Positions 1 through 20,594 are shown, counted from the first letter of the whole stretch. The stretch is 63,384 nt of DNA, filler included, from Octopus bimaculoides (GCF_001194135.2; 4 parts of 4 records of this genome joined end to end with filler, not necessarily neighbours in it), one strand, 5' to 3'. Numbers and translations: made by a program. The notes: generated from the letters alone by a model not told the origin.

Positions 1-30
1 TATATATATATATATATATATATACATATA

Positions 31-128
31 TAGGTGCAGGTGTAGCTGTGTGGTAAGAAACTTTGTTCCAAAGCACATGGTCCTGGATTCATTCCCACTG
101 TGTGGTAACTTGGCATGTGCCTTCTGCT
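31..128 (+). mobile_element. SINE family A, 5' tRNA-like head fragment
   Basis: ggtgcaggtgtagctgtgtggtaag...ggattcattcccactgtgtggtaacttggcatgtgccttctgctat matches the head of the full copy at 37681-38070; A-box/B-box-like spacing; flanked by (TA)n. Confidence 0.7.
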
Positions 129-1539
129 ATATATATATATATATATATGATACACACACACATACATATATATGTATGTATGTATATATGCATATATATA
201 TCTATTATATAAAAGTCAATGTCTTTATGTGTGTTCGTAATATTCCTAAAATTTCAACTTCTTACGAGTTAGTAACCCCCACAATTAAGTCATTTTTCCT
301 AAGCCAAGATGAATACAATTGTAGTTTTGAAAGCTGTAGAGTCACCTGAGCATATAAGATGAGCGTTATTTGTAATTCAATGGTATAACAGTGTAAGAGT
401 TTGCTTTGAGATGTATTTAGATTGTGATTTCTGCAACGTGGTGCATAAATTGTTGAGTAAAAGAGAAGCATCTTTGCCTCCACTGATTCAGTTGCAAAGT
501 GTTATTTTGAGTAAAGTTATTTGGTTGCAGACCTCCTTTGAGTCTTTTTATTATCACTGGGTCAGATATAGTCCCCAGATGGTAACAGTGATTTCAAGGC
601 CCTCCCAGATAAGTGACTGGTCATTCAAAGAGATTTATAGATTGCAAATTTATTCTGTCCAGTTACCTATTGGCATAGGTAACTCCAGAGGTGACACATT
701 CATTTCCCCTTCGCCTTCATGTCACACAGTTGTTAATGTTTATTTGAGTTGGATCATGCCCTTCCAATTACTATAGATCTGTAATGCATCTTACGGCTGT
801 GCCCGTCACCTGTATGGTGAGGAATCCTACATTAGGGAGTGGTAACAACTAGGGTAGGGTAGCTGACTGCCTTTGGGATCATTCGTCTTTTGGTTTCCTG
901 TAGCTTTGCTCTCTTTTACAAACCCAGTGAACATTCATATATTTCTGATTTCAAAGAAATTCGAACAATACATATAAGACCCAAGTTAAAAAGATTCTCA
1001 GCAATTCAACTTCTCTGGTTGACTTTAAGCCCCCCCCCCCCTACCCAATAGGAGCCTTAACTCCTACATTTTAGACCTCCATGTACTCCATTTTTCAGGA
1101 GCAATAGCCTTTGAATAGGTTTCATAAGATTTGAATTTTGGAATCTGTGCATAAAGCTGAGTAGTATGGGATAAATATGTCATGATTAGAATTTTTGTTA
1201 GGGTGTGTAAAGAGGGAAAGAACCCTCATTACAATTCTTAATCTGCAATTCTTCAATTCCATGTGACACGGGCAAAGCCGGATATCTCTGCTAGTACCTG
1301 ATAAAAGTGTCAGCTTGATGTCACAGTGTGGGTATATTATTTGAGGTTGTGACACAAGATGTAGTGTGACTGTTGTTGTTGTTGCTGCTATTGTTGCTAC
1401 TGCTACTACTGTTATTGTTGTTAATTACTCTATTTAATGGTCTACATTGGTTATAAATCTTTGTCAGTTTCCTGATTTCTTTCTTTCTTCTTTATTGTTT
1501 TCATTTAGTTGTATGATGCTAAATTCTTTTCATTTGTGG

Positions 1540-2330
1540 TATTCTTGTACTATGCTTTTATGGGGTTGACTATTTCTAATTAGTCTTTGTATTTTTTATA
1601 TTACTTTATGGGCTATGTTTTTTGTATTTTTCTGTTGTACCTATAATTACTTTGTTAAATGTATCTATTTCACTGCCTATACTGGTGATTGTTGTTCTGT
1701 TGTTGAAGCTTAAAATGCTTGATTCTATTCTTTGGTGGACTCCATTTCAGTATGCTGCTTTGAAGCTTGTAGAATCATTTTTGCTTTCTTCATTAAAGAA
1801 TGTGTATGTTGAAATGGTAATTGATAGTCTAATATTTGAAAGATTGTTCTACCCAACAGGTTGTGTTAGCTTGGTGCAGAACACAAAAAATGATGTCTGG
1901 AGGAAGAGTTGGTATAGTTGGCTTGTTACAGTGGTGGGGGGGGGGCGTTGTTATGGGTTGTTTAGAATGTAAAGGAAGTTTATTTGTCTTACTATAAGGC
2001 TACATTTTGTGTTATCTGTACTATTTGAAAACCAGGATATGTTGAGTGCTTTGAAGTCTTCCCCAGAATTGGTGTTTGACAGAATGTTAAAGTGTTGCAG
2101 CAGGCTTGTGTAACCTGGTGAGACAATTGTTGAGGTCAGTGGTGGTATATATATGCTTATTTTATGTCCTTTATAATTTGAGGTTTTACTTTTGAAAGCC
2201 TACATTTTCGGTGTGTTGTTAACTCCTGCTGGTTTGCAAATGCCATTTGGAACGTCTATGTATTAGATATATGATGATATTTTATGAAGCTGCTTTTGGT
2301 GTGAGAGATTCTATCTAATGTGACCTCAGT
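1540..2330 (-). mobile_element. Degenerate Penelope-like element remnant (linker and GIY-YIG region)
   Basis: Minus-strand fragments NISWFSNSTDNTK (cf. IIWFNPP..NVKT), EQSFKY and FNEESKNDSTSF occur in the same order as in the clearer copy at 55740-56395; many stops and frameshifts. Confidence 0.45.
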
Positions 2331-2444
2331 GCCCAGGCTGTGAGCTACAAAGTTGAGATGGGGTTGTCAAACAACAACGGAGAGATACACAGAGAAATAT
2401 ATTGGTGCAATGGCAGGGAGGGGGTGTTTAAGGTCAGGGTCAAT

Positions 2445-2700
2445 AATCATAGGTCCTCATTTCGAATCCTAAAGAGGTGCAATGACAACATTAGCCAGTA
2501 ATATATGGCGATCAAAAGAGGAAAGACTGCTGCACAAAATCAACTGAAAAATGTTGGAATAGCCTGAATTATTTTTGAATAGAAGAAGATGTCGCAAGCT
2601 TTGTTTGGCTGAGAAAAGAATCATTCTCAAAAATTCACATGATCAAAGTACTGTCCTGAACACGGAAAGCAAAATATTCCATTGTTGTCATTAAGATAGA
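2445..2700 (+). mobile_element. Penelope-like element GIY-YIG C-terminal remnant
   Basis: Reads HRSSFRILKR / TTLASNIWRSKEERLLHKIN*KMLE / CRKLCLAEKRIILKNSHDQSTVLNTESKIFHCCH, the H..SF, T.L..IW and C.LCL.EK...LN...I..CH motifs of the PLE endonuclease end. Confidence 0.65.
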
Positions 2701-2882
2701 AAATTTGTTCTGGCAATGTGATTATCCCACTTTTTGGACTAAAGAATAGAAAACCTGTTCACATGTACAGCTAATCCCCTTCGGCCACTGCTGACATCAT
2801 CCCATGGGGAGTAACTCTTCTTTCGTTCTTGAAAGATAGAAAGATATAACTTTTTACCACATGATTTTCTTCTGCTTTTCAG

Positions 2883-3001
2883 CATCTCAAAGTGAACCAG
2901 GGCTGTATAACTACCTTCATAAAGGAGGTTATGCAGTTCTGGCCAGTATGTCTAAAGGGTTATCAATACTGCCTAGTGCAGCAATCAAAGTGAAACCAAT
3001 G
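2883..3001 (+). CDS. Candidate upstream exon of the lipid-kinase-like gene (uncertain)
   Basis: Strong acceptor ttttcttctgcttttcAG and donor ATG|gtaaca; open frame SQSEPGLYNYLHKGGYAVLASMSKGLSILPSAAIKVKPM; it ends in phase 0 while the next exon needs phase 1, so the join is unresolved. Confidence 0.3.
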
Positions 3002-3136
3002 GTAACATTCTAACTAGTTAATGCCATAACCAGGAATATACTGCTTGACTATATAAAAGTATACATGTGTGTGTGTGTACATACACAAACACACATATAG
3101 TGCATTTTCTAATTATTCATTCCCTTACTATTCTAG

Positions 3137-3206
3137 TTTCGCTGTTGGCCTGTTTATTTTCAAAACGACAACCTCTGAAGTTGAAGCTGTCCTACAGATT
3201 AGTTCG
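3137..3206 (+). CDS. Ceramide/sphingosine-kinase-like gene, exon A (70 nt, phase 1 to 2)
   Basis: Acceptor cccttactattctAG and donor CG|gtgagt; encodes SLLACLFSKRQPLKLKLSYRLVR; phase fits the exon at 9665. Confidence 0.55.
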
Positions 3207-4289
3207 GTGAGTGAGTTTGTGTATACTATTGTGTGTGTGTGTGTGCGCGCATGCACGCATGTATAAATGAGTAACAAAGATGTACAGGGGTCAATTCATT
3301 ATAGCCATTTCAAGCGACTCCTTTAATTGATTAATGAAAACATTACATCATTTGAATGAAACCATTCTCGGCAGATGATCGCATAGACTTCAAACATAAA
3401 GGATACAACCATTTCCTTAACATATTTACATCAATAGTGGAACTCAAAATATTTATATTGTTTCTTTTGTTATATCTGTAGCAGAATGAGTTTAGAAAAT
3501 AATGCATACCTTGTCAAGTCAACTATAATTTAGAGAGTAACAGAGGAAATATTGGGGGTCTGGATAAAAAGTGTGGTAACCTAGTTAATTACATGTAGAA
3601 GACTTTATATAGAATGTAGTCTTCAACCATTTAGAATCAAATCCATTTGGAGTTGTCAACTGTATTCTAGTTAATGGTGATAAATCAATTAATGTCAGAC
3701 AATCTACTAGACTCTCAATGTACTAGAACCATATATCTAGCTTTTATCTACACAAAAGGGTAGGGCATAGGGTTAGTAGTAAGGGAATGCCTGATGGGGA
3801 AGGGGTGATAATTGGAATAAAGAAGGATAGGGATGGTTAATACTTATTTTGATCTATAAACTTTCAATAATTATATTATGTATTTACCCCTTAAGTTTTG
3901 GGAATCTCTTCCCATATAGAGAGTATAACGTAAATTTTACAATTGATTACTAAAATCTTGCACCTCCCCTAAGTATAAAATATATCCCCTAAGATCTGTT
4001 ATTATTCTACCTAATGTATTTTAGAAATATTTTATAAACCCAATTCCAAAGATAATTTTATTCTTATTTCTGTTAATATTTGATACATGTATTTTATTTT
4101 ATATTATATTGATAATAATAACATATCTAGGAATTCTTTTCGATATACCAATATAATTTATAAAATAATCCTTATTTTATCTTATTTTTTATTGTATTCT
4201 ATATTATGGTATATCCTTATTTATATCTCTTTCATACCTTTTATATCATTCTGTAAAAAATATCTACACTCATTATTTGCGTTTTTTTT

Positions 4290-6200
4290 GGCCCCATTGA
4301 CCACCACTACCTGACTTCTATCTTTTAGAAAGTCATGTAGCCATTCTCCAAGTTTTCCAAATATACCAAGATTTCGGAGCTTGTGACAAATCATACCATG
4401 GTTGACTTTGTCAAAGGCTTTTGTAAAGTTGAGGTATATCACATCCACATTTGAGTTGATGAGCAGCTTCTTTAGCACCGAGTCATAATGCTGCAAGAAC
4501 TGTGTTAGGCAGCTTCTACCTGGTTGAAAACCATGCTGGGTGTCAGTCAGCAAGTCATTCTCTTCAAGGAATGCAATTGATTTCCTTCGGACTCTTCCAT
4601 GACTTTGCTGATGTATGACATCAGAGAGATAAGCCTATAGTTTTTAGCATCTGCTCTACTTCATCCTTTATGGATAGGGCATATTATTCCCTCCTTTAGT
4701 TTGTCCAGGAGCTTACCATTTGCAAGGAAGCTCTGAAAATGTAGCTGCAATGGTTTTGCAAGGACTCGTTTGCATGACTTGAGGAGGATTGCTAGGAATC
4801 CATCAGGGCCAGCGGCTGAGTTTGCATCTATATCATCTGCTGCTAGCATTACATCCTTTTGTTCAATGTTGATGTAATCAATTGTTACTGCCTCCCATTC
4901 AGCTTCTGCAGCAATAAAGAATTCTATAGGCTTGCTAATTTGCACGTGTCACAGGGCTGGGGTGAAGACACTTTTGAACTGTTCATTCAGTGTTTCACTT
5001 ATTCTCATTGGGTTTCCCATGAGGGAGCCATCTTTTTGGAGGAGTGGCCCTACCCTGCAATGCACAGAGACAGTCTCCTTGCCGTACCTAAAGAAGGCTT
5101 TAGGGTTTGACTTTGTATTTCTTATGACCCAGGCTTCTCTGTCTGACCTTTCCTTCTCATGGGAGTGCTTCAGATGTTTCTCAATCTCCAACAGTGTCGT
5201 TTCCAGGCGGGGTTCCTTACTGCCGTTGAGTTCTCTGTTGAGGTGTTTTGCAATCTTTGTACACCATCTCATAAGAATTTTCCTCTCCCTGAGAATCTTG
5301 TTTTTATGTGCAGTGGCCCTTCTCTCTGGGACAAAATTGTAACAAAAGGCTTGCATTATGGACATTAAAGCTTTCAATTTCATGTTTATGTCAGGTGTAG
5401 AGAGACATTGGGACCAGTCCTGTTTGGTGATCTCTTTCTCAATTGATTCCCAGTCTGCTTTGTGGCAGTTCAGATTGGATAGGTTTTGGGTACTTGTCAT
5501 AGGTTGCATGTCTGTGGGTTCCTTTGGTCCATACATGGTCAGCTCTATTATGCTGTGATCCAAAATTTTGGTGTCACTATCACATTATGGATGAGATCCA
5601 CATTGTTTGTGAAGCAGAGATCAAGTATATTGTTTGCCCTGGCTGGCTGGAGTATTATTTGCTCCATATATGAATTGTTGGTGAGGTTGAGCAGGGATTC
5701 CACTTGACTTTGCTCACATCGCATCATTCCTGAGAGGAAAAGGCCTTTGGGCCATTTCATATTGGGCAGGTTGAAGTCTGCCATGAGAAATACACTGGAG
5801 TGCTCTTCTATTTTGGTTAAGACCTCTTCTATCCTTGCAAAGCAGTCTTCAAATTGGCCCATATGATTTGGGCATCTGGTGGGCGATATGTAGTACATAT
5901 AACTATATCCAATCATCTTATATGTACAATTAGTGTATCACACACTGAATTTGAGTGTGATGAAAGGATCTAGGATGTGAGATCTTCATGGATGTATATT
6001 GCAACTCCACCATGGCTCCTGTTTTTTCTATCATTTCACAGTACCATGGTATGTGTACTTTTGCATCTGCAATGTTGGGTTTTAAGTGTGTTTCAGTGAG
6101 TGCTATGCATAAAGCTTGATTTCATGTCACTAGGTCTCTCAGGAAGATAATTTTAGTTCTGTTACTGAGTTGTAACAGTCCTCTTACATATATGAAGTAT
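4290..6200 (-). pseudogene. LINE ORF2 remnant (APE endonuclease plus N-terminal half of reverse transcriptase), CR1/L2/Jockey-group-like, frameshifted and 3'-truncated
   Basis: Motifs in order on the minus strand: ALTETHL, MADFNLP, NNILDLCFTN, DHSII, AAGPDGF, ICPIHKG, QHGFQPGRSCLTQ, VDVIYLNFTKAFDKVNH, LHDFLKDRSQVVVVNGA; ends before the QG and YADD motifs. Confidence 0.92.
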
Positions 6201-6399
6201 AGTGGCATGATCTTTGTGCTGATGCCAGTGGTGGACACCCTGGATCCATTGGTTGTGGCAGTCTTGCATGTTGGTGGGGATGGCTCCAACTCTGGAATTG
6301 ATGAAGCCAGATTAGTTGTTGCACAATCTTTTGAGCCATGTATAAAAAAGATTGTTGCTCAGTTGCAACCGTTATGATGACTTCTGAGTAGGGCTGATT

Positions 6400-7090
6400 T
6401 TTAGAAATAGTGCACACTACATCGGCATTTTTAGCTTTGATGCAGGTGATGCATGACTTTTTCGACTTTGGAGTCTTCCTGTGTCTTTTGGAGGGAGGCT
6501 TTTTCTTTTGGTCTGTCTGTTGTTTGGCTTTGGATGCAAGAAGCAGCAGTCTGCACCATCATGTCCATGCCAGCATTCACCACACAGGAAGAATTTACAC
6601 ATTTGGGAGCTCTCTTTTGTTTTTTGCTTCATTTTTACTTCTATTGTCATCCTTTTTTCCTTCTTTTATCTTTATTTTTAGCCCTTTATTGGTTCTTTTG
6701 CACTTTTTGGGTGTTGATATTGGTTGTGGTAGCACCATCCATACTGATGTCTTCTTCCTTGGCAGGTCTCTCAATTTTGGTTTTCGTTTCAAGTGTGTTC
6801 CCTTGTGGATCAGTGGAGCCAAAGGAACATCTGTCACTCACATCAGGGTCCCCATCCTTGTCCTCCTTTTTGAGCTTCTCTGTGCAAAGATGGTATCCAG
6901 TGTGCTAATATGAGGTCTGATAAGAACATAGGAGTGGATAAATTCTTGTTTTTGTGCTTTATCTGAACTATGATTCTTATATATAGCCATTGCTCTTTAG
7001 AGCTGCCATTATAATATTATTTGAATTGTCTCCTTCAGCTATTTTCCACCCTCTCAATTAAGAGTTTCAGTTCTTCGCTGACCCAGTTTT
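6400..7090 (-). pseudogene. ORF1 remnant and probable 5' region of the same LINE, with a CCCH-type zinc finger
   Basis: CKFFLCGECWHGHDGADCCFLHPK in ORF 6417-6650, preceded by Lys-rich fragments (ORF 6595-6837), directly upstream of ORF2 on the same strand; 5' limit approximate. Confidence 0.7.
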
Positions 7091-7184
7091 GAGACATCCT
7101 TAACCTGCCATTTCCTTCTGTATACATTTAGAGAAAGATTGAGATAAGGAGAGATAGGGAGAGGGAAAGAAAGAGAGGTGTAAG

Positions 7185-7625
7185 TCATATTGATTTATGT
7201 ATGCACAGATGGGAGAGATATTAGTTGAGATAGGGAANNNNNNNNNNNNNNNNNNNNNNNNNNNNNNNNNNNNNNNNNNNNNNNNNNNNNNNNNNNNNNN
7301 NNNNNNNNNNNNTCATATTGATTTATGTATGCACAGATGGGAGAGATATTAGTTGAGATAGGGAAGAAAGATTTATGTATCTTTGAGTATAGATCTATAA
7401 ACTTTCTATAGGCATATTTCCGTTTATACACATGTTCAATAGATAAATATACACAGAGAGAGAGAAAGAGAGAGATTTATGAGTGCACAGACAGGGGAGA
7501 TATTAGTTGGGATAGGGAAGAAAGATCTATGTGTTTTTGAGAATATAGCTATAATCTTTCTATAGTCATTTTCCCATATACACACGTTCAATAGATATAT
7601 ATACAGGGAGGGAGGGAGAGAGAGA
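7185..7625 (+). repeat. About 155-bp tandem repeat (2 diverged units plus a gap-flanking duplicate)
   Basis: gatttatg(t/a)(a/g)tgcacaga...gagatattagttg(a/g)gatagggaagaaagat recurs at about 7192, 7320 and 7475. Confidence 0.8.
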
Positions 7626-7672
7626 GCATTGTGTATGTGTGTGTGCTTGTGCATGCATGCTAGAGAGAGACA

Positions 7673-7709
<37 letters not shown>

Positions 7710-8164
7710 CGTGCGTGCATGCATGCTACAGAGAGAGAAAGAGAAACATGGGGGAGAAAGAAATCAAGAGGAATTGAGAAACTAATCAATCAATCACAAA
7801 TTAAATCGAAGGGTATAATAGTGCAGATTATTATGTTCTGGGATCATGAATGTAAAGAAAAATGGAATTTACTTCTCTTAGTTTAATGTTAAAAACAAAT
7901 CCACTACTTGTGAACAAAAGCATACTTACCTCAAAATTATTGTTTTACGATAAATCATAATGACCAGAAAGCAAAAATTGTATTCATATGGATTTTTCTT
8001 CACTTATTTTCTAAGTGAATCAAATGTTTAACCATGTAAGTTGAGAAATTTTTGTATATTTGCAGCTGCTTTTCTCCTTTGCTAAACCTGTTAATGCTAG
8101 TTGAAACAAAGTTTCATACCGTTTTAACATGATGATCCCCATGAGCAAAACATTTTATATGTAT

Positions 8165-8330
8165 CCAGTTCACTCAGCAGGCAAAAGTAATTAAAAGGCC
8201 AGCCTTGTCATATTTTGTGTTGTGCTGAATCTCCCTGTCTGTCATTTGTACATTAATTTCATAAGCAAGCTGTTCGGTTGATCAGATCAACTGGAACCCT
8301 TGTTGTCATAACTGATGAAGTGCTAGTTCA
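8165..8330 (+). mobile_element. SINE family B, 3' fragment
   Basis: cagccttgtca...gcaagctgttcggttgatcagatcaactggaaccct...gtcataactgatgaagtgc is the reverse complement of the 3' part of the copies at 15105 and 20203. Confidence 0.7.
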
Positions 8331-8414
8331 TTATAAGGTAAAGACCTGCTTCAGTCATGAATGACCATGGGATTGCACCTAAAAAGTTCCCCTCCGAGAC
8401 ACAAGTCCAAGCAA

Positions 8415-8675
8415 GGTCGTTTATGGAAGACCAGTTGCCCATGCATACCAGTCTCCTCTCTCCATGCCACCAATGTTATCCAAGAGAAAGGCAAAGGCCA
8501 ATACAGCTTGGCACAAGTGACATCACAACTCATTTCTACAGTTGAGTGAACTGGAGCAACATGAAATAAAGTATTTTGCTCAAGAACACAACACAACACA
8601 CAGCCTGGTCCCAGAATTGAACTCACTACCTCGTGATTGTGACTCTAACGCTCTAATCACTGAGCCATGTGCCTT
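8415..8675 (-). mobile_element. SINE family C (tRNA-like head plus central conserved domain)
   Basis: Minus strand reads gaaggcacatggctcagtgattagagcg...gagttcaattctgggacc...gttcttgagcaaaatactttatttcatgttgctccagttcactcaactg, homologous to 12461-12718. Confidence 0.75.
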
Positions 8676-9029
8676 CTTTATAACTGATTAGAAATTTGGT
8701 GTGTGCAATTGGGGCACACTGTCAATAGTTCATTTACATCAGTGTTTGTCCTGAGATAACATCTCTTATTAAAGAGTGATGAGAATTTGTCCCAGCAATA
8801 ACCAGTAACAGCACTGGATGCTTTTCAGCCTTTCTGGGCCTCTTCAATGGCATGCACTCACAGATAAGAATTCACTGTCTTCAATATAGGAAAAAAATAT
8901 GACATTTTACTAATGTTGTGAGTAGACACCCTGCTGATTAGAAGTTGACTTTGTATATACATAAGGTATGATACATAGATGGCTATTTTAATTAAATACT
9001 GCCTCAGTTGTGTATATTGGATTTCTTCT

Positions 9030-9066
9030 GGTAATAAGAATGATAATAATGATAATAATAATAATC

Positions 9067-9161
<95 letters not shown>
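9030..9161. repeat. (TAA)n microsatellite
   Basis: Direct inspection. Confidence 0.95.
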
Positions 9162-9164
<3 letters not shown>

Positions 9165-9370
9165 TGCAGTGTGTAAGGTGTTTATAAGTCATTTAAGAAA
9201 CACACAAAACCATTAGATTCACTTCAGCATTTAAATTTAATTTGCTAAAATATTTTCGTTGCTTTGAGACTGCAACCTGTTCACTGACAAAATTCCGTCA
9301 ATGTTGAAGTGAATCTAACGGTTTTTGTGTGTTTCTTAAATGGCTTATAAACACCTTCCACGCTGCAATT
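9162..9370. mobile_element. Foldback element/MITE with about 70-bp terminal inverted repeats
   Basis: aattgcagtgtgtaaggtgtttataagtcatttaagaaacacacaaaaccattagattcacttcagcatt (9162-9231) is the near-perfect reverse complement of 9300-9370; about 70-bp non-coding spacer. Confidence 0.85.
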
Positions 9371-9427
9371 GTTTTCGTTCCAGCACAAGATCTCAGATCA
9401 GGTCACTTGCTATGCAAGTACATCTCC

Positions 9428-9465
<38 letters not shown>

Positions 9466-9494
9466 TTCTGCTGCAGGCATAGTTTTGGGAGAGA

Positions 9495-9565
9495 AGTCAG
9501 TCAATTACATTGACCCCAGTGCTTAAATAGTATTTATTTTATCAACCCCAAAAGATGAAAGGTAA
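9495..9565 (-). mobile_element. SINE family D (Deu/Nin-domain-like) fragment
   Basis: ttgaccccagtgc...ttttatcaaccccaaaagatgaaaggtaaa matches the core of the copies at 36586 and 36878. Confidence 0.6.
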
Positions 9566-9664
9566 ATGAATAAGAAAAACAATGATAACAACTACAATCA
9601 TAAAAAATATTTTGTTCAAAATAGGCTTGTTTTTATTATTTTGTTTACTTTGTTTCTTTTGCAG

Positions 9665-9696
9665 GGACACTGATACCAGTTGTGAAATTGATGGAG
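9665..9696 (+). CDS. Ceramide/sphingosine-kinase-like gene, exon B (32-nt mini-exon, phase 2 to 1)
   Basis: Long polypyrimidine acceptor ttgtttactttgtttcttttgcAG and consensus donor GAG|gtaagt; encodes DTDTSCEIDG; phases fit both neighbours. Confidence 0.75.
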
Positions 9697-9724
9697 GTAA
9701 GTCAATTTTGGAATTATGATATAA

Positions 9725-9935
9725 TTGGAAAATGTAAAAAGCATCCATGCTGGTGCCACTTAAAAAGCACCCAGTACACTCTGTAAAGTGGTTGGCATTT
9801 GGAAGGGCATCCAGCCATAGAAACCAAACCAAAACAGACAATTAGAACCTGATACAACTCTCTGGTTTACCAGCTCCTGTCAAGCGGCCTGACCCATGCC
9901 AGTGTGGAAAACAGATGTTAAATGATGATGATGAG
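9725..9935 (+). mobile_element. RTE-type LINE 3' UTR/tail fragment ending in (TGA)n
   Basis: gttggcatttggaagggcatccagccatagaaacc...acccatgccagtgtggaaaacagatgttaaatgatgatgatga is the same tail as the RTE element at 21226. Confidence 0.75.
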
Positions 9936-10407
9936 GAGGAGGGGGTATAAACATCAATGTAAATACAGACAATGTTCAAATTGATGATTATAATAATATT
10001 AGTAATGGCGGTGATTACGATCTTGTACTAATGTAATGAAAATCATTCAATCTGAAGAGAAGAGGAACTGTCCTTGCTCTATTGTACCCTCCTTCCATTC
10101 CTGACTGGTACAGCAGATGTGTTTGTTGTGCAGCTGAAACAATTGTCTCCTTATATCTGAATGGAAAACATGTTGAGAGAAGGCTTTCATAATGTATCCA
10201 GTTCTAGGAAGAATATATTGGTTGTATTGCTTAGTACAGGGTGTGATGGAAGAAATTAGACGCAGTAAGAATGTTATAAATAGATTCTCGTACATCAGAT
10301 GGCACCCAGCTTATTAGTTTAAAGAAGCAGCTTCAAAAGTGTTGAAGAAGAAAAGCAACAAAGAAAAACAAAATAAAATGTCGTTATTTTTTAAATTATT
10401 ATTTTAG

Positions 10408-10637
10408 ACACCGACAACATCAACGCAAGCAGAGCAAATGAGGAAGAGGAAAAATGGGTAACTATTGAAGATGACGTCCAAGGAATTGAAAGTTTTTTGG
10501 TGTCCCTCATGGAATCTGGTCCCACGTTGAAGTACAGCTTTGGTGAGAATAGTGGCCAGCTATTCATTATAAAAAAATGTTCCTTAGGTGAACATATGAA
10601 GTTTTACAGTCATTTGAAGAATAATAAACCATCTGTG
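10408..10637 (+). CDS. Ceramide/sphingosine-kinase-like gene, exon C (230 nt, phase 1 to 0)
   Basis: Acceptor attattttAG and donor GTG|gtaagt; stop-free frame TDNINASRANEEEEKWVTIEDDVQGIESFLVSLMESGPTLKYSFGENSGQLFIIKKCSLGEHMKFYSHLKNNKPSV; the acidic run-W and L.IIKKCS...F pattern resembles CERK EEWQVV...LILIRKCSRFNFLRF (from memory). Confidence 0.8.
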
Positions 10638-10688
10638 GTAAGTACTGAATGTTAGGATTTACACTTTACTGTTCTGTGCTTTTATTTT

Positions 10689-10715
10689 TATTCAGAGTTG
10701 TATGTGTACAGTGTA

Positions 10716-10759
<44 letters not shown>

Positions 10760-10817
10760 CTATTCAGAGTTGTATGTGTACAGTGTAAGTTAGTTAGTTA
10801 GTTAGTTAGTTAGTTCT
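10689..10817 (+). repeat. Local tandem duplication of tattcagagttgtatgtgtacagtgtaa followed by (GTTA)n
   Basis: Two copies, starting at about 10689 and 10761. Confidence 0.9.
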
Positions 10818-11772
10818 CTGCATGCCATGAGGCACATAAGGCCACAATACAATCTCTCCAATCAGCTCTATTTTATGTTACTGTTCTGGTCTCATTCCAG
10901 CTTCTTCTCCTCTCTTTTCTTCTTTCCTTGTCTGTGTAGAAGATTGTCATGAGTGTGTTCTGTTGATCGAATCAACTAGAACCCTCGTGATCATAACTAA
11001 TGGAGTCACAGTTTGTTATCTGCTTGTGTTTGTGTGTGTGTGTGTGTGTGAGTATGTCTCTATGTATGTGTGTGTGTATAAATATGTGCATGTGTATATG
11101 TGTGCATATACAAATTGCTAATACTGTAAGCAGAACAGTAAAAATGTGTGCAAGACTTTTCAACGGTTCAACATGTAAATTAAACCAGGACAAAAAAAAA
11201 GAGAGAGAGAGAATGGGTGGTAAAGAGGGAGAGAGAGAGAGAGAATGGGTGAGAAAGAGGGAGAGAGAGAGAGAGAGAGAGAATGAGTGAGAAAGAGGGA
11301 GAGAGAGAGAGAGAGAGCTTTGTTCTTTCATTCGAAACCAGCCCCATCTTTGTAAGAACTTAAATATCAAAAGAGAAAAAACACACATACACACAAACAC
11401 AATCACAGACACACATGCACATACGTATATCTGTGTATGTATGTTTATGTATATATGTGTGTGTGCGTGCACATGCGTATGTGTGTGTTAATGTATTCAT
11501 GTTTGTTTTGTGCACCTGTGTGTAATTAATGTGCACTCATGCATGCGTGCACACAACCATTATGTGAGTATGTATATATATATTTACTGTTGTGTCTGGG
11601 GAGAGTCATTTTCTTATCGTGCCTTAAAATTTAACACACTCACCATTAAAATTTCCACTTATTTCTTATTTTTATTTTCCTAAAATTTTCGTTGCGTCTT
11701 GCAACCTTTTCAATAGTCTTGATTATTGAAACCATTGATTTATCCATGTAGCATTACGTACAACTTGCTGTT

Positions 11773-11835
<63 letters not shown>

Positions 11836-12210
11836 TGTATGTATGTATGTATGTATGTATAGTGGTAGGTACATAGAGCTTTAGAAGTATTCAAAGTATT
11901 CAAGTCTATTTTGGGAATACATACATATATGTATGGAGTAACTTTATGTTAAGGAGTGGAACATGCAATCTCCTGTTAGTCAGACTGCCCCATGGTCCTA
12001 GCAGACAAAATGGAAAAGGCGTTGCTCCGATATTTGTCTCTGAAGAGTATTGTCCTACCTCAACTACATATTTCTTTCTAGTTAACAGTTTAAATGACCT
12101 ATGCTGTAAATATTCATCATCACCATCATCATTATCATCATCATTTAACATCTGCCTTCCATACTGGCATATCGTTTAATGCTAAATTAATTTACCATCT
12201 TCTTTTTTAG

Positions 12211-12353
12211 TTTGGCCTGAATTATGTAGACTGTGTACAGATGTCCTCATGTAGGATCGAACTTGTTGAGCCAAACCTCATCAGCAATCGAAATGTGTAC
12301 CTGAACTGTGATGGGGAGTTATTAACTATAACATCAAATGTAATTGATATCAG
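12211..12353 (+). CDS. Ceramide/sphingosine-kinase-like gene, exon D (143 nt, phase 0 to 2)
   Basis: Acceptor tcttcttttttAG and donor CAG|gtgagt; encodes FGLNYVDCVQMSSCRIELVEPNLISNRNVYLNCDGELLTITSNVIDIR, containing the NCDGE motif of the DAGK/CERK/SPHK C-terminal lobe. Confidence 0.85.
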
Positions 12354-12460
12354 GTGAGTAATATGACTATTTTGAGGTGTAATGAATGGATATGAGTGTG
12401 TTCTTATTTGGTCATATGTATGTATATAATTGAGGCTTGTATATGAGTTTGTGTTAATGT

Positions 12461-12718
12461 GTGGAGGCGCGTGGTTTAGTGGTTAGGTTGTCAGCATCAT
12501 GATCGTAAGATTGTGGTTTCGATTTCTGGACCGAGTGACGCGTTGTGTTCTTGAGCAAAACACTACAGTTCACGTTGCTCCAGTCCACTCAGCTGGCAAA
12601 AATGAGTAACGCTGTGATGGACTGGCGTCCCGTCCAGTTGAGGAACACATACGCCATTGAAACTGGGAAACCGGGTCCATGAGCCTGGCTAGGCTTTAAA
12701 AGGGTGCATTTATTTATT
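12461..12718 (+). mobile_element. SINE family C, near full length
   Basis: tRNA-like head ggaggcgcgtggtttagtggttagg...ggtttcgatttctggacc, then cttgagcaaaacac...ttgctccagtccactcagctggcaaaaatgagta, ending in (TTTA)n. Confidence 0.8.
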
Positions 12719-12731
12719 ATTTTATGTGTTA

Positions 12732-12772
<41 letters not shown>

Positions 12773-12984
12773 GTTGGCTCACATCCTTACACTTTCTCAG
12801 CTCATTAGCCAACTATTTTACAGTAGGAACAGTAGACATAGAGCTATGCTTGCTTTATGCTCTTGCTTGATGGGGCTGGAGTCATCTCAGGTTAGTGGTC
12901 CCAGAGACAACATCATGCATAGAGCCAACCAGGTCCACCAGTGTTCTCCCTCATTAATGGCCCCGTGCCAGCCCCTCAGCATCC

Positions 12985-13150
12985 TCAACCTCAAGGCAGC
13001 TTTCAACACAGTTGAATATGCATCCTAGTGGAAAATTCTCAAACTCGTTAGCATGCCTCCCAAGATCTCCATCCTGCTCTGACAGCTCTATATAGCAGTG
13101 CCAAGAGCTGCATGCAGGTAAATTGTGTCATCTTCAATTGTGCCGTGAGC
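12985..13150 (+). mobile_element. Reverse-transcriptase fragment of a non-LTR element (RTE-like)
   Basis: LSILNLKAAFNTVEYAS*WKILKLVSMPPKISILL*QLYSSAKSCMQVN resembles the DLKAAFDSV..LW.IL...G.P.K...L..LY...V.VN region; two stops. Confidence 0.6.
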
Positions 13151-14175
13151 AAGTCTCTGGCATTACCGTTGTGAACTACCACCTTACTGACCTGGAGTAT
13201 ACTGATTGACCAACTCAGGGACGCCATGTACACTGTAAATGTAAATATAGAAAGTGCTCAGAATGTAGACCTAGGTGAGAAAGGAAAGGGAACAATGATG
13301 GCAGAAAGACCAGAAATGAGTAGTTCGGAGGTAATTGAGAGTGTGTAGCTATTGAAAGTACTCAATAACATTGGGTGTGTGCATTTGCTCAGGTGACTGA
13401 GGAGTAGAATTGGAGAGAGAACAATCACATCAGGACCAAAATGATTGGGAGGATAGAACAAGCAAAAGTATAATAGGAAAAAGTAAGATATGCTGGGTGG
13501 GGGAATGTTAAGAGGGGGGNNNNNNNNNNNNNNNNNNNNNNNNNNNNNNNNNNNNNNNNNNNNNNNNNNNNNNNNNNNNNNNNNNNNNNNNNNNNNNNNN
13601 NNNNNNNNNNNNNNNNNNNNNNNNNNNNNNNNNNNNNNNNNNNNNNNNNNNNNNNNNNNNNNNNNNNNNNNNNNNNNNNNNNNNNNNNNNNNNNNNNNNN
13701 NNNNNNNNNNNNNNNNNNNNNNNNNNNNNNNNNNNNNNNNNNNNNNNNNNNNNNNNNNNNNNNNNNNNNNNNNNNNNNNNNNNNNNNNNNNNNNNNNNNN
13801 NNNNNNNNNNNNNNNNNNNNNNNNNNNNNNNNNNNNNNNNNNNNNNNNNNNNNNNNNNNNNNNNNNNNNNNNNNNNNNNNNNNNNNNNNNNNNNNNNNNN
13901 NNNNNNNNNNNNNNNNNNNNNNNNNNNNNNNNNNNNNNNNNNNNNNNNNNNNNNNNNNNNNNNNNNNNNNNNNNNNNNNNNNNNNNNNNNNNNNNNNNNN
14001 NNNNNNNNNNNNNNNNNNNNNNNNNNNNNNNNNNNNNNNNNNNNNNNNNNNNNNNNNNNNNNNNNNNNNNNNNNNNNNNNNNNNNNNNNNNNNNNNNNNN
14101 NNNNNNNNNNNNNNNNNNNNNNNNNNNNNNNNNNNNNNNNNNNNNNNNNNNNNNNNNNNNNNNNNNNNNNNNNNN

Positions 14176-14210
<35 letters not shown>

Positions 14211-14231
14211 TATATATGTACATACATATAA

Positions 14232-14365
14232 GCGTTAGGAAGGGCATCCAGCTATAGAAACCATGCTAAATCAGACTGGAGTCTGGTGCAGCCTTTCAGC
14301 TTACCAGCCCTGGTCAAACTGTCCAACCAGCATGGACAACGGATGTTAAATGATGATGATGTTGA
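14232..14365 (+). mobile_element. RTE-type LINE 3' tail fragment
   Basis: gcgttaggaagggcatccagctatagaaacc...cagcatggacaacggatgttaaatgatgatgatg. Confidence 0.75.
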
Positions 14366-14394
14366 TATAGACGAGCTCCTTTATATATCTATGT

Positions 14395-14620
14395 GTGTGT
14401 CTTTGTGTCTGTGTCTGTCGTCCTGCTACTACTTGTCAACCAGTGTTGGTGTGTTCACGTCCCTCTGTAATTAAGCAGTTTGGCAAAAGATGCTGATAGA
14501 ATAAGTACCAGGCTTAAGAAAAGATATGCACTGGAGTTGATTCATTTGACTAAGAATTTTTCAAGGTGGTGCCCCAGTAAGGCCACAGTCTAATGACTGA
14601 AACAAGTAAAAGACAAAAGA
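14395..14620 (+). mobile_element. SINE family A, 3' half
   Basis: Homologous to 37860-38070; ends ...ccacagtctaatgactgaaacaagtaaaagacaaaaga. Confidence 0.8.
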
Positions 14621-14622
14621 AT

Positions 14623-15000
14623 CTTTTATCTTTTACTTGTGTCAGTCATTATACTGTGGTCATGCTGGGGCACTGCCTTGAAGGGTTTTAGTCAAATGAA
14701 TTGACCCCAGTACTTATTTTAATAAGCATGGTACTTATTCTATTGGACTCTTGCCAAACTGTTAAGTTACAGGGATATAAACAAACCAACACATTTCTTA
14801 AGTGGCGGTGGGGTCAAATGCAAACACACACACACACACACACATATACAACATGCTTTTTTCAGTTTCAATCTATCATATCCACTCCACCGAGAGCTAT
14901 ATAGTAAAAGACACTTGTTCAAGGTGCCACACAATGGGACTGAACCCAGATCCATGTGGTCAGGAAGCAAACTTCTTGCCACACAACCACGCCTGTGCTC
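14623..15000 (-). mobile_element. SINE family A, full length, tail-to-tail with the previous copy
   Basis: cttttatcttttacttgtgtcagtcatta...gggactgaacccaga...cttgccacacaaccacgcctgtgc is the reverse complement of the family A sequence. Confidence 0.85.
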
Positions 15001-15104
15001 ATGTTGAGGACTTTTTTTATTTTTTTAATTTCATTTTCTTTTGTTCAAGTTGTAATGTTTACTTGTTCCCTGGTTTTGTATTTAATAAATGCATACAAGA
15101 TATA

Positions 15105-15594
15105 TTGTTGGCACTCCGTCGCTTACGNNNNNNNNNNNNNNNNNNNNNNNNNNNNNNNNNNNNNNNNNNNNNNNNNNNNNNNNNNNNNNNNNNNNNNNNN
15201 NNNNNNNNNNNNNNNNNNNNNNNNNNNNNNNNTTACGACGTCGAGGGTTCTAGTTGATCTGATCAACAGAACAGCCTGCTCGTGAAATTAACGTGCAAGT
15301 GGCTGAGCACTCCACAGACACGTGTACCCTTAACGTAGTTCTCGGGGATATTCAGTGTGACACAGTGTGACAAGGCTGGCTCTTTGAATTACAGGCACAA
15401 CAGAAACAGGAAGAGTGAGAGAAAGTTGTGGTGGAAGAGTACAGCAGGGTTCGCCACCGTCCCCTGCCGGAGCCTCGTGGAGCTTTAGGTGTTTTCGGTC
15501 AATAAACACTCACAACACCCGGTCTGGGAATCAAAACTGCGATCCTAGGACCGCGAGTCCGCTGCCCTAACCACTGGGCCATAACACCTCCACA
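15105..15594 (-). mobile_element. SINE family B, full length (interrupted by a probably spurious N gap)
   Basis: Highly similar to 20203-20594; minus-strand head tgtggaggtgttatggcccagtggttagggcagcggactcgcgg...gattcccagaccgg. Confidence 0.85.
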
Positions 15595-15763
15595 CAAGAT
15601 ATAAAACCATTATCATTTTTACTTATTGAGGATTTGTATAGCATCAGTTTCTGTTACTTTTGTTAATTTTGCTCTTGGAATTGGTGACGTTACTGAATTT
15701 TATTTCTATTCTTACCAAGAGATATGTTACAACATCCATGTTGTTATATTCAGCACCAGCCTG

Positions 15764-15801
<38 letters not shown>

Positions 15802-15807
15802 TTGCAG

Positions 15808-15850
15808 GTTTCATTATTGTGGCTTGAGGATATTTAGCAGTCCAACTTAA
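15808..15850 (+). CDS. Ceramide/sphingosine-kinase-like gene, terminal coding exon E
   Basis: Acceptor (tta)n-ttttgcAG; completes the split codon AG|G (R), then FHYCGLRIFSSPT-TAA, comparable to CERK R|VHCQLVRLF. Confidence 0.75.
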
Positions 15851-16043
15851 AGACATTATATCAGTGGAAGAATTACATACGTGAAGACAGCACCCGTACT
15901 CTGTTTGATTTAAAATCATAGGGCACATCATACCGACTAAAATTTTATATATATGCATACATATATGTGCATGTACGTATATACGCATGTATGCTTATCT
16001 GTTTGTGTCTGTGTATGCATATATATAATACGGATGGCTTACC

Positions 16044-16390
16044 CTTTTACTCTTTTACTTGTTTCAGTCATTTTGTCTGTGGCCATGCTGGGGCACCGCC
16101 TTTAGTCGAGCAAATCAACCCCAGGATTTAATCTTTGTAAGCCTAGTACTTATTCTATCGGACTCTTTTTGCCAAACCACTAAGTTACGGGGATGTAAAT
16201 ACACCAGCACCGGTTGTCAAGCGATGTTGAGGTGACAAACACAGACACACAAACACACACTCATATATATATACATATACATATATATGACGGTCTTCTT
16301 TCAGTTTCCGTCTACCAAATCCACTCACAAGGCTTTGGTCAGCCCGAGGCTATAGTAGAAGCTACTTACCACACAGCCACTCCTGCGCCT
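16044..16390 (-). mobile_element. SINE family A with an internal deletion removing the B-box region
   Basis: Tail cttttactcttttacttgtttcagtc through gctatagtagaag, then jumps directly to acttaccacacagccactcctgcgcc. Confidence 0.85.
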
Positions 16391-20202: not shown

Positions 20203-20594
20203 TTGTTGTTGTTGTTGGCACTCCATCACTTACGACGTCGAGGGTTCCAGTTGATCTGCTCAACAGAACAGCCTGCTTGTGAAATTAACGTGCAAGTGGC
20301 TGAGCACTCCACAGACACGTGTACCCTTAACGTAGTTCTCAGGGATATTCAGCATGACACAGTGTGACAAGGCTGACACTTTCAATTACAGGCACAACAG
20401 AAACAGGAAGTAAGAGTGAGAGAAAGTTGTGGTGAAAGAGTACAGCAGGGTTCGCCACCATCCCCTGCTGGAGCCTCGAGGAGCTTTAGGTGTTTTCGGT
20501 CAATAAACACTCACAACGCCCGGTCTGGGAATCGAAACCGTGATCCTATGACTGTGAGTCCGCTGCCCTAACCATTGGGCCATTGTGCCTCCAC
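20203..20594 (-). mobile_element. SINE family B, full length, with (CAA)n tail
   Basis: tRNA-like head at 20520-20594, body matching 15233-15594, tail ttgttgttgttgttggcactcc on the + strand. Confidence 0.88.

What the first reader, a model, noticed from the sequence alone, without database searches (positions are those of the whole stretch)
3137..15850. Hidden five-exon gene: divergent ceramide/sphingosine-kinase-like protein missed by the ORF track
Seen: exons 3137-3206, 9665-9696, 10408-10637, 12211-12353 and 15808-15850 all have GT-AG sites and matching phases (1-2-1-0-2). They splice into one stop-free frame: SLLACLFSKRQPLKLKLSYRLVRDTDTSCEIDGDTDNINASRANEEEEKWVTIEDD...QLFIIKKCSLGEHMKF...FGLNYVDCV...YLNCDGELL...DIRFHYCGLRIFSSPT*. 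Known: the acidic-W, IRKCS, F..FV, NCDGE and R|VH..L.LF pattern, including the last two intron positions, is that of CERK-type DAGK-family kinases (recalled, not searched). Inference: this is the C-terminal half of such a gene, with the N-terminal catalytic exons upstream of the window or unrecognised.
Basis: partly seen in the sequence, partly recalled or inferred. Interest (0 to 1): 0.7.

Follow-up and report, generated by a model that had tools for sequence, protein, structure and literature searches.

The report
Last five exons of octopus ceramide-kinase gene
The five exons are real and splice exactly as described, but they are simply the 3' end of an already annotated Octopus bimaculoides gene (XP_014784081.1, "ceramide kinase"), a divergent member of the ceramide-kinase family of lipid kinases, so the finding is correct but ordinary.

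Summary
The five exons have AG/GT borders and intron phases 1-2-1-0-2. They splice to a 171-codon open frame ending in TAA. RNA contigs from two runs carry all four junctions.

The peptide equals residues 344-514 of XP_014784081.1 / UniProt A0A0L8I9H5, "ceramide kinase [Octopus bimaculoides]", 514 aa. The window is that gene's own assembly (GCA_001194135.2, CM046607.1) and holds coding exons 8-12 of 12. Exons 1-7, with the DAGK catalytic domain, lie upstream beyond an 8.2-kb gap.

The family assignment is supported:
- Profile-profile match to vertebrate CERK/CERKL: E 1.8e-50.
- The predicted fold is closest to sphingosine kinase 1.
- Seven introns, including the last two, sit at the same position and phase as in chicken CERK (six also in CERKL).

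The protein is divergent:
- Pfam CERK_C scores below its cut-off.
- PH_CERK is not detected.
- The CxxxCxxC motif reported as essential in CERKs is absent.

The assembly gaps are all intronic. Gap 1 is an artefact; the mRNA joins the exons across gaps 2 and 3.

The parts
3137..3206 (+). Coding exon 8 of 12 (70 nt; completes codon 343, encodes residues 344-365 and starts codon 366; helix that leaves the catalytic domain, SLLACLFSKRQPLKLKLSYRLV)
   Evidence: AG/GT borders. Present in RNA contigs of X26, X28, X29 and X30 with sharp ends at 3137 and 3206/7. Exact map of XP_014784081.1 onto L001 55225-55294.
9665..9696 (+). Coding exon 9 (32 nt; residues 366-376, start of a variable acidic linker)
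   Evidence: AG/GT borders. The loose end behind 3207 in X28 reads this exon. Exact map to L001 61753-61784.
10408..10637 (+). Coding exon 10 (230 nt; residues 377-453: acidic linker, the E-K-W element, a beta-sandwich strand, and FGENSGQLFIIKKCS, which is the counterpart of CERK's HLGDGSSDLILIRKCS)
   Evidence: X26 contig record 148-378. All sampled words are held by 11 or more RNA runs. Alignment. Exact map.
12211..12353 (+). Coding exon 11 (143 nt; residues 454-500 and the first two bases of codon 501: beta-sandwich strands and the NCDGE motif; D487 and G488 are invariant across the family down to cyanobacterial DAGK-like kinases)
   Evidence: X26 contig record 379-524 joined directly to exon 10. 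100% identical in the sister-species RNA contig of X46. Invariant columns. Exact map.
15808..15850 (+). Coding part of the last exon (43 nt; completes codon 501, residues 502-514 FHYCGLRIFSSPT, stop TAA at 15848-15850)
   Evidence: X26 contig record 520-558 and X28 contig record 3-133. Exact map. The intron before it has the same position and phase as in chicken CERK and CERKL.
15851..15937 (+). 3' UTR, minimum extent seen. Its true end is unknown. The arithmetic of the 1955-nt X29 contig suggests about 220 nt, i.e. to near 16070.
   Evidence: The X28 contig runs to its own end at about 15937. There is no AATAAA or ATTAAA between 15851 and 16400.
3207..9664 (+). Intron 8 (phase 2). It holds a decayed non-LTR retrotransposon on the minus strand (4221-5916) and assembly gap 1 (7238-7312), which is an artefact.
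12354..15807 (+). Intron 11 (phase 2). It holds assembly gaps 13520-14175 and 15128-15232 and a copy of an interspersed repeat of about 360 bp (15233-15594).
   Evidence: The mRNA contigs join 12353 to 15808 directly.

Best explanation
Window 3137-15850 (+ strand) contains the last five coding exons, 8-12 of 12, of the annotated Octopus bimaculoides gene for XP_014784081.1 (UniProt A0A0L8I9H5; 514 aa; NCBI name 'ceramide kinase').

The protein is a DAGK-like lipid kinase of the CERK/CERKL family. It has an N-terminal PH-like domain interrupted by a disordered insert of about 75 residues. It then has the DAGK catalytic domain with NPYSGAG, GGDG and IIPAGTGN. Both of these are encoded upstream of the window. 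Last comes a C-terminal beta-sandwich domain.

The window encodes that C-terminal domain, residues 344-514:
- the helix leaving the catalytic domain;
- a variable acidic linker;
- the strands of the lipid-binding sandwich;
- the NCDGE motif;
- the final strand.

By analogy with SphK1 and DgkB (inference from established structures, not tested here), the Asp/Glu of the DGE motif help hold Mg-ATP at the cleft between the two domains. The sandwich forms the pocket for the sphingoid or acyl chains. The most likely activity is ATP-dependent phosphorylation of ceramide, or a closely related sphingolipid, at the 1-hydroxyl.

Shown: the exon structure, transcription, identity with the annotated protein, family membership, fold, and shared introns. 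Inferred: the catalytic competence and the substrate.
For: Exon structure and transcription:
- Splice sites, phases and frame are as described.
- mRNA contigs carry all four junctions.
- The ortholog transcript in a sister species has the same junctions.

Identity:
- The peptide equals residues 344-514 of P0033, which is XP_014784081.1 / A0A0L8I9H5.
- The window is 100% identical to L001 52089 onward, in GCA_001194135.2 CM046607.1.
- The exact exon map shows 12 coding exons.

Family:
- Exhaustive phmmer with the window peptide finds Argonauta 'ceramide kinase-like' at E 1.8e-60. It also finds molluscan 'ceramide kinase(-like)' proteins at 1e-9 to 1e-4, nearly all of the full-length ones carrying DAGK_cat.
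- hhalign of cephalopod versus vertebrate CERK/CERKL gives probability 100, E 1.8e-50, 391 columns.
- Pfam DAGK_cat scores 7e-23.
- Invariant residues are N168 P169, G224-G227, I266-G269 and D487 G488.

Fold:
- The AF2 model has pTM 0.75.
- Its best PDB matches are SphK1 3vzb (E 3e-26, TM 0.74-0.77), AGK 7cgp_B, DgkB 2qvl and YegS.

Gene structure:
- 7 of the 11 introns share position and phase with chicken CERK, and 6 of those also with chicken CERKL, including the last two. Two more have the same phase a few residues away.
Against: Nothing argues against the gene identity. The following weigh against the specific function 'ceramide kinase':
- The CxxxCxxC motif between C4 and C5 is absent here and in every molluscan homologue examined, as it is in CERKL. 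PMC3069040 describes the motif as conserved in all CERKs and important for human and rice CERK activity.
- Pfam CERK_C is below its gathering score, and PH_CERK is not detected.
- In a rough NJ tree, vertebrate CERK and CERKL group together (83%) to the exclusion of the molluscan sequences. There is therefore no one-to-one orthology with the biochemically characterised CERK.
- Octopus has at least one further paralogue (P0026/P0007).
- No enzymatic data exist for any molluscan member, to my knowledge.
Confidence: 0.95

Rival explanations
1. Same gene, but the protein is not a ceramide kinase. It would be either a CERKL-like protein without measurable lipid-kinase activity, or a kinase for a different lipid such as another sphingoid or glycerolipid.
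For: - It lacks the CxxxCxxC motif reported as essential for CERK activity. It also lacks the Cys-rich insert before NCDGE that vertebrate CERKs have.
- HLGDG is replaced by SFGEN.
- CERK_C scores below the Pfam threshold.
- The cephalopod clade sits on a long branch.
- A search seeded with the Argonauta orthologue returned mainly vertebrate CERKL, not CERK. That list is biased by word sharing.
Against: - All nucleotide-binding and catalytic signatures of active DAGK-like kinases are kept: NPYSGAG, GGDG, IIPAGTGN and NCDGE with Glu. CERKL has DGD at the last of these.
- The region is well conserved among octopods. Residues 393-514 are 94% identical to O. sinensis and 65% to Argonauta.
- SphK1, which is active, also lacks both CxxxCxxC and GDG (my recollection of the SphK1 sequence, not tested here).
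Confidence: 0.3
2. The exons belong to another branch of the DAGK-like superfamily (sphingosine kinase, acylglycerol kinase or diacylglycerol kinase) rather than to CERK/CERKL.
For: - The best solved-structure matches are SphK1 and AGK. No CERK structure turned up in the PDB sequence search or the fold search.
- The Pfam CERK-specific models are below threshold.
Against: - Profile-profile E 1.8e-50 to CERK/CERKL over both domains.
- The only C-terminal Pfam model with any signal is CERK_C.
- Seven intron positions and phases are shared with chicken CERK, six of them also with CERKL.
- The N-terminal beta-rich domain and its alignment to the end of the CERK PH region fit CERK/CERKL.
- Public annotations of all close homologues are 'ceramide kinase(-like)'.
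Confidence: 0.03
3. The frame is a chance or decayed one: a pseudogene or an untranslated transcript.
For: Expression is low in the raw-read RNA runs sampled. There were 0-1 reads in about 6% of X24 and X40.
Against: - The ORF is intact at 514 codons, with canonical splice sites.
- Spliced transcripts are assembled in many RNA runs.
- Orthologues with intact frames exist in O. sinensis/vulgaris, Argonauta and a more distant cephalopod-like transcriptome.
- Exon 11 is identical at the nucleotide level in a sister species.
Confidence: 0.01

Closest known systems
XP_014784081.1 / UniProt A0A0L8I9H5, 'ceramide kinase [Octopus bimaculoides]' (DAGKc domain-containing protein)
   Same: It is the same gene. 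Residues 344-514 are identical to the spliced peptide. The window is part of the same assembly record, CM046607.1.
   Different: Nothing differs.
Vertebrate ceramide kinase (CERK; e.g. macaque P0088, chicken P0190)
   Same: - The architecture is PH-like N-terminus, then DAGK_cat, then a C-terminal sandwich.
- The motifs NPxxGxG, GGDG, IIPAG, E-x-W, (I/L)IxKCS and NCDGE and the final R-[VF]-H...L-[RK]-[IL]-F strand are shared.
- Seven introns have identical position and phase.
   Different: - Identity is only about 25%.
- There is no CxxxCxxC motif and no Cys-rich insert before NCDGE.
- HLGDG is replaced by SFGEN.
- The PH domain is interrupted by a disordered insert of about 75 aa.
- Pfam PH_CERK and CERK_C are not reached.
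- It is not a one-to-one orthologue in the NJ tree.
Vertebrate CERKL (ceramide kinase-like protein, retinitis pigmentosa gene; e.g. chicken P0038)
   Same: - It belongs to the same family and shares six introns at identical position and phase.
- It also lacks CxxxCxxC.
- These were the most numerous vertebrate hits of the Argonauta orthologue.
   Different: - CERKL has N[VI]DGD instead of NCDGE and NNGS instead of G-E/D-x-S.
- CERKL groups with vertebrate CERK, not with the molluscan proteins.
Sphingosine kinase 1 (PDB 3VZB), AGK (7CGP chain B), bacterial DgkB (2QVL) and YegS (2P1R, 2BON)
   Same: They share the two-domain DAGK-like lipid-kinase fold. Foldseek gives E 3e-26 to 1e-11, with TM-score up to 0.77 on the target.
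   Different: - Sequence identity is 14-21%.
- They have no N-terminal PH-like domain.
- Sequence searches with the window peptide did not reach them.

Membership tests
DAGK-like lipid kinase superfamily (Pfam DAGK_cat PF00781; SphK/DgkB/YegS fold) | DAGK catalytic domain with a Gly-rich NPxSGxG loop and the GGDG motif | tested here: met
   PF00781 scores E 7e-23 on residues 162-300 of the full protein. NPYSGAG is at 168-174 and GGDG at 224-227. This part is encoded upstream of the window.
DAGK-like lipid kinase superfamily (Pfam DAGK_cat PF00781; SphK/DgkB/YegS fold) | C-terminal beta-sandwich domain carrying the conserved D-G-E motif (C5 region) | tested here: met
   NCDGE is at residues 485-489, in window exon 12211-12353. 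D487 and G488 are invariant in a 24-sequence alignment that includes cyanobacterial members.
DAGK-like lipid kinase superfamily (Pfam DAGK_cat PF00781; SphK/DgkB/YegS fold) | Two-domain fold superposable on solved members | tested here: met
   The AF2 model has pTM 0.75 and pLDDT above 85 over most of both domains. Foldseek matches SphK1 at E 3e-26 (TM 0.74-0.77), and also DgkB and YegS. This is a predicted structure, not a solved one.
CERK/CERKL family | End-to-end sequence-profile similarity to CERK/CERKL across the catalytic and C-terminal domains | tested here: met
   hhalign gives probability 100 and E 1.8e-50 over 391 columns, residues 115-512. The window part alone gives BLASTP E 5e-05 to macaque CERK.
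CERK/CERKL family | Pfam CERK_C (PF19280) at or above its gathering score | tested here: not met
   13.4 bits for the window peptide and 18.2 bits for the whole protein, against a cut-off of 33.5. The weak hits lie in the right register: query 133-167 matches profile positions 177-210 of 227.
CERK/CERKL family | N-terminal PH domain (Pfam PH_CERK PF25382) | tested here: inconclusive
   The HMM does not detect it. The model shows a confident beta-rich N-terminal domain (strands 4-32 and 114-138, helix 140-155) split by a disordered insert at 37-109. hhalign aligns residues 115 onward to the end of the CERK PH region. All of this lies outside the window.
CERK/CERKL family | Shared gene structure (intron positions and phases) | tested here: met
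7 of the 11 octopus introns coincide in position and phase with chicken CERK, and 6 of those also with chicken CERKL.
Ceramide kinase in the strict sense (CERK) | CxxxCxxC motif between C4 and C5. PMC3069040 describes it as conserved in all CERKs and important for activity. | tested here: not met
   The regular expression finds it in macaque, chicken, turtle and tarpon CERK. It is not found in the octopus protein, any molluscan homologue, or CERKL. The alignment shows a gap there.
Ceramide kinase in the strict sense (CERK) | One-to-one orthology with characterised CERK | tested here: inconclusive
   In the NJ tree (BLOSUM62 distances, 100 bootstraps), vertebrate CERK+CERKL group at 83% and cephalopod clade A at 100%. 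The deeper molluscan nodes have 42% support or less. This suggests pro-orthology to both, but the method and sampling are weak.
Ceramide kinase in the strict sense (CERK) | Ceramide-dependent, ATP-dependent formation of ceramide-1-phosphate | not testable with these tools
   This needs a biochemical assay.

The most novel reading that the evidence does not exclude
Cephalopod (and possibly all molluscan) 'ceramide kinase' genes form a lineage that lacks the CxxxCxxC motif held to be universal and essential in CERKs. On this reading the octopus protein is either a lipid kinase with a different substrate or regulation, or a CERKL-like non-enzyme. Molluscs might then have no canonical CERK at all. 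My searches could not exclude a third, canonical CERK gene in octopus.
Probability: 0.2. Interest if true: 0.3.

Novelty: already known. Interest (0 to 1): 0.08.

Why it matters
It matters little for discovery, because the gene has been in RefSeq and UniProt since the first O. bimaculoides annotation.

It is useful as validation. A reader working from raw sequence alone recovered five small exons (32-230 nt) spread over 12.7 kb. The borders, phases and family assignment were exactly right, including two recalled intron positions.

The by-products are minor:
- The molluscan CERK-family proteins examined lack the CxxxCxxC motif that the literature calls universal.
- One assembly gap in the reference is an unmerged 53-bp overlap.

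Tried and rejected
1. The word-indexed homology search with the 171-aa peptide found nothing, although the identical protein is in that collection. I treat this as a tool behaviour, not as evidence. The exhaustive phmmer search found the family.

2. phmmer against PDB sequences gave only chance FGFR2 hits with E about 0.8.

Upstream exons could therefore not be sought with RNA in 1-3136. The question was settled otherwise: the exact protein-to-genome map puts exon 7 about 12 kb upstream of the window.

4. I suspected an alternative 3' end. Contig laying shows presence, not absence. Also, 189 + 1545 + 220 nt fits a full-length mRNA of the annotated isoform.

5. I looked for a poly(A) signal after the stop and found none within 550 nt. 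The 3' end is left open.

6. Raw-read RNA runs X24 and X40 gave 0-1 reads on the exons in the roughly 6% sampled. The junction evidence therefore rests on assembled contigs, not on counted junction reads.

7. A literature search for octopus ceramide kinase found nothing specific to this gene.

Full report
**Observation**

I extracted the five stated intervals. Each is preceded by AG and followed by GT, with GTGAGT or GTAAGT donors. The last interval ends in TAA at 15848-15850. The intron phases are 1-2-1-0-2, as stated.

**Transcription**

All sampled words of exon 10408-10637 and of exon 12211-12353 are held by many RNA runs of the same organism. The words of 12211-12353 are also held by runs of two related organisms.

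The main contig evidence is as follows:
- One 558-nt RNA contig of run X26 carries 3137-3207 (record 48-118), 10406-10636 (148-378), 12210-12355 (379-524) and 15805-15843 (520-558). The 29 letters between the first two pieces fit the 32-nt exon 9665-9696.
- A 923-nt contig of X28 carries 15805-15935 at record 3-133 and 3137-3207 at 535-605. The 401 letters in between equal exons 9665-9696, 10408-10637 and 12211-12353 exactly.
- The loose end behind 3207 reads the first 30 bases of the 9665 exon.
- In run X46, from a sister species, a 1577-nt contig has the 12211-12353 exon with no difference. Its flanks translate to HLKSNKPSV and FHHSGLRIFS, the O. sinensis versions of the neighbouring exons.

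All four junctions are therefore real and conserved.

**Assembly gaps**

The three gaps inside the finding lie in introns. 7238-7312 is in the intron after exon 3137-3206. 13520-14175 and 15128-15232 are in the intron before the last exon.

The mRNA contigs join the exons with no extra letters. Order, orientation and reading frame are therefore intact across all three gaps, and no exon of this isoform is hidden in them.

Gap 1 is an artefact. The 53 bases before it are identical to the 53 bases after it. DNA contigs of four independent runs join 7184 directly to 7313.

**Identity**

Pfam on the peptide gave only a weak CERK_C hit (E 0.054, 13.4 bits against a cut-off of 33.5). The hit is in the right register, with query 133-167 on profile positions 177-210 of 227. 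The word-indexed protein search found nothing.

The exhaustive phmmer search found 19 proteins. The best is a 477-aa Argonauta hians 'ceramide kinase-like' protein (58% identity, E 1.8e-60, query 2-170 on residues 310-476). The rest are molluscan 'ceramide kinase(-like)' proteins, and nearly all of the full-length ones that were scanned carry DAGK_cat.

Searching with the Argonauta protein returned 'ceramide kinase [Octopus bimaculoides]', 514 aa. Residues 344-514 of this protein are letter for letter the spliced peptide. The preceding residues KWMGSAKYLF are the translation of the loose end seen upstream of exon 3137 in the mRNA. Its accessions are XP_014784081.1 and UniProt A0A0L8I9H5.

Its gene lies on CM046607.1 of GCA_001194135.2 and spans 58 kb. 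The window is 100% identical to positions 52089 onward of the fetched locus L001, with the same N runs. It begins immediately after an 8226-N gap.

An exact protein-to-genome map gives 12 coding exons. Exons 1-7 lie 12 to 42 kb upstream of the window.

**What the protein is**

The full protein has DAGK_cat (E 7e-23) with NPYSGAG, GGDG and IIPAGTGN.

An alignment of the four cephalopod sequences matches an alignment of vertebrate CERK and CERKL with hhalign probability 100 and E 1.8e-50. The match runs over 391 columns, from residue 115 to 512, and so includes the whole window-encoded part.

| Octopus | Vertebrate CERK |
|---|---|
| EEEKW | EEW |
| FGENSGQLFIIKKCS | LGDGSSDLILIRKCS |
| FGLNYVDC | FDFTFVEV |
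| NCDGELL | NCDGEVL |
| IDIRFHYCGLRIF | IEVRVHCQLVRLF |

D487 and G488 of NCDGE, encoded by the 12211-12353 exon, are invariant in a 24-sequence alignment reaching cyanobacterial DAGK-like kinases.

An AlphaFold2 model (pTM 0.75) shows these features:
- a beta-rich N-terminal domain split by a disordered insert (37-109);
- the alpha/beta catalytic domain;
- a C-terminal sandwich with two disordered loops (368-390 and 409-423, both in the window part).

Its best solved-structure matches are sphingosine kinase 1 (3VZB, E 3e-26, TM 0.74-0.77), AGK, DgkB and YegS.

**Gene structure**

I mapped chicken CERK and CERKL onto their loci in the same way. Seven of the eleven octopus introns coincide in position and phase with chicken CERK, and six of those also with chicken CERKL.

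| Octopus | Chicken | Phase |
|---|---|---|
| N\|VQRPRK | Q\|TCRPK / N\|GFQNRPK | 1 |
| DIT\|ILSE | DVV\|VTEH (CERK) / DVT\|VTEY (CERKL) | 1 |
| FN\|GVVVVGGD | YD\|GVVCVGGD (CERK) / FD\|GVVCVGGD (CERKL) | 2 |
| IIPA\|G | same | 1 |
| LHIIR\|G | same | 1 |
| KPSV\|FGLNY | KDDQ\|FDFSF (CERK) / VKNQ\|FSFPF (CERKL) | 0 |
| VIDI\|RFHY | AIEV\|RVHC (CERK) / EVHV\|RVHP (CERKL) | 2 |

**How it differs from canonical CERK**

- Identity to vertebrate CERK/CERKL is 21-26%.
- Pfam PH_CERK is not detected, and CERK_C stays below its threshold.
- The CxxxCxxC motif is present in the vertebrate CERKs examined. It is absent from the octopus protein, from every molluscan homologue retrieved and from CERKL. A paper on rice CERK describes this motif as CERK-specific, conserved in all CERKs and important for human and rice enzyme activity (PMC3069040).
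- The Cys-rich insert that vertebrate CERKs have before NCDGE is also missing.
- In a rough NJ tree, the cephalopod clade containing this gene has 100% support and a long branch. Vertebrate CERK and CERKL group together (83%). A second octopus paralogue (O. vulgaris CAI9742561.1) is separate.

The family assignment is therefore firm. The label 'ceramide kinase' in the strict biochemical sense is an inference. I put about 0.5-0.6 on ceramide kinase activity. I put about 0.3 on a different substrate or no activity.

**Mechanism (inferred from established knowledge of SphK1/DgkB structures, not tested here)**

The window-encoded domain would form the lipid-binding sandwich. Through the DGE motif it would contribute acidic ligands for Mg-ATP at the interdomain cleft. 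The upstream-encoded GGDG aspartate would act as the catalytic base.

**Verdict**

The gene is already annotated, so novelty is nil and interest is low.

Noticed in passing
window 7185-7365 (gap 7238-7312): The 53 bases before the gap are identical to the 53 bases after it. DNA contigs of four runs join 7184 directly to 7313. The gap plus one copy of the 53-mer (128 bases) is an unmerged contig overlap in the reference assembly, not missing sequence.
   Followed up: yes
window 24470-25903, minus strand: An intact 477-aa ORF encodes about 15 tandem C2H2 zinc fingers (Pfam zf-C2H2 E 1.6e-87). It is also called as a gene in the public record (L001 76558-77938). Internally it is repetitive at about 80% DNA identity between finger units. 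It is typical of the expanded octopus C2H2 family.
   Followed up: partly
window 4221-5916, minus strand (inside the intron after exon 3137-3206): A decayed non-LTR retrotransposon. An endonuclease fragment (Exo_endo_phos_2, E 5.5e-07, 5548-5916) and a reverse-transcriptase fragment (RVT_1, E 3.7e-06, 4221-4553) are broken into several ORFs.
   Followed up: partly
window 22475-23118, minus strand: A second reverse-transcriptase fragment (RVT_1, E 2.1e-06), lying between the kinase gene and the zinc-finger gene.
   Followed up: no
window 15233-15594 and 20213-20594; also L001 15605-15985 (inverted): An interspersed repeat of about 360-380 bp with 92-93% identity between copies. One copy starts exactly at the right edge of assembly gap 15128-15232, which probably explains that gap.
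   Followed up: no
window 9400-9510, 10954-11300, 11731-11950, 12064-12174, 12508-12700, 15756-15803: Intronic stretches with very high apparent RNA and contig depth (thousands) and many spurious 'joints'. They are simple or interspersed repeats (TA/CA/GA-rich) shared with many transcripts. They swamp the read-laying tables and are not evidence of expression here.
   Followed up: partly
whole finding (tool behaviour): The word-indexed protein search with the 171-aa peptide returned no hit, although the identical 514-aa protein is in that collection and was returned when approached from a homologue. Contig laying also missed contigs that must cover an exon. Negative results from these two tools should not be read as absence.
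   Followed up: partly
L001 10001-40074 (upstream of the window): Coding exon 2 of the gene (L001 21124-21534, 411 nt) encodes an insert of about 75 residues (37-109). The insert is predicted disordered. It is 90% conserved in O. sinensis but only 16% in Argonauta, and it splits the PH-like domain.
   Followed up: partly
proteins P0026/P0007 (O. vulgaris CAI9742561.1/CAI9742562.1): A second octopus CERK-family paralogue exists. Its public gene model looks damaged: part of DAGK_cat and the region after IIPA are missing or replaced, and it has NCDGN instead of NCDGE.
   Followed up: no
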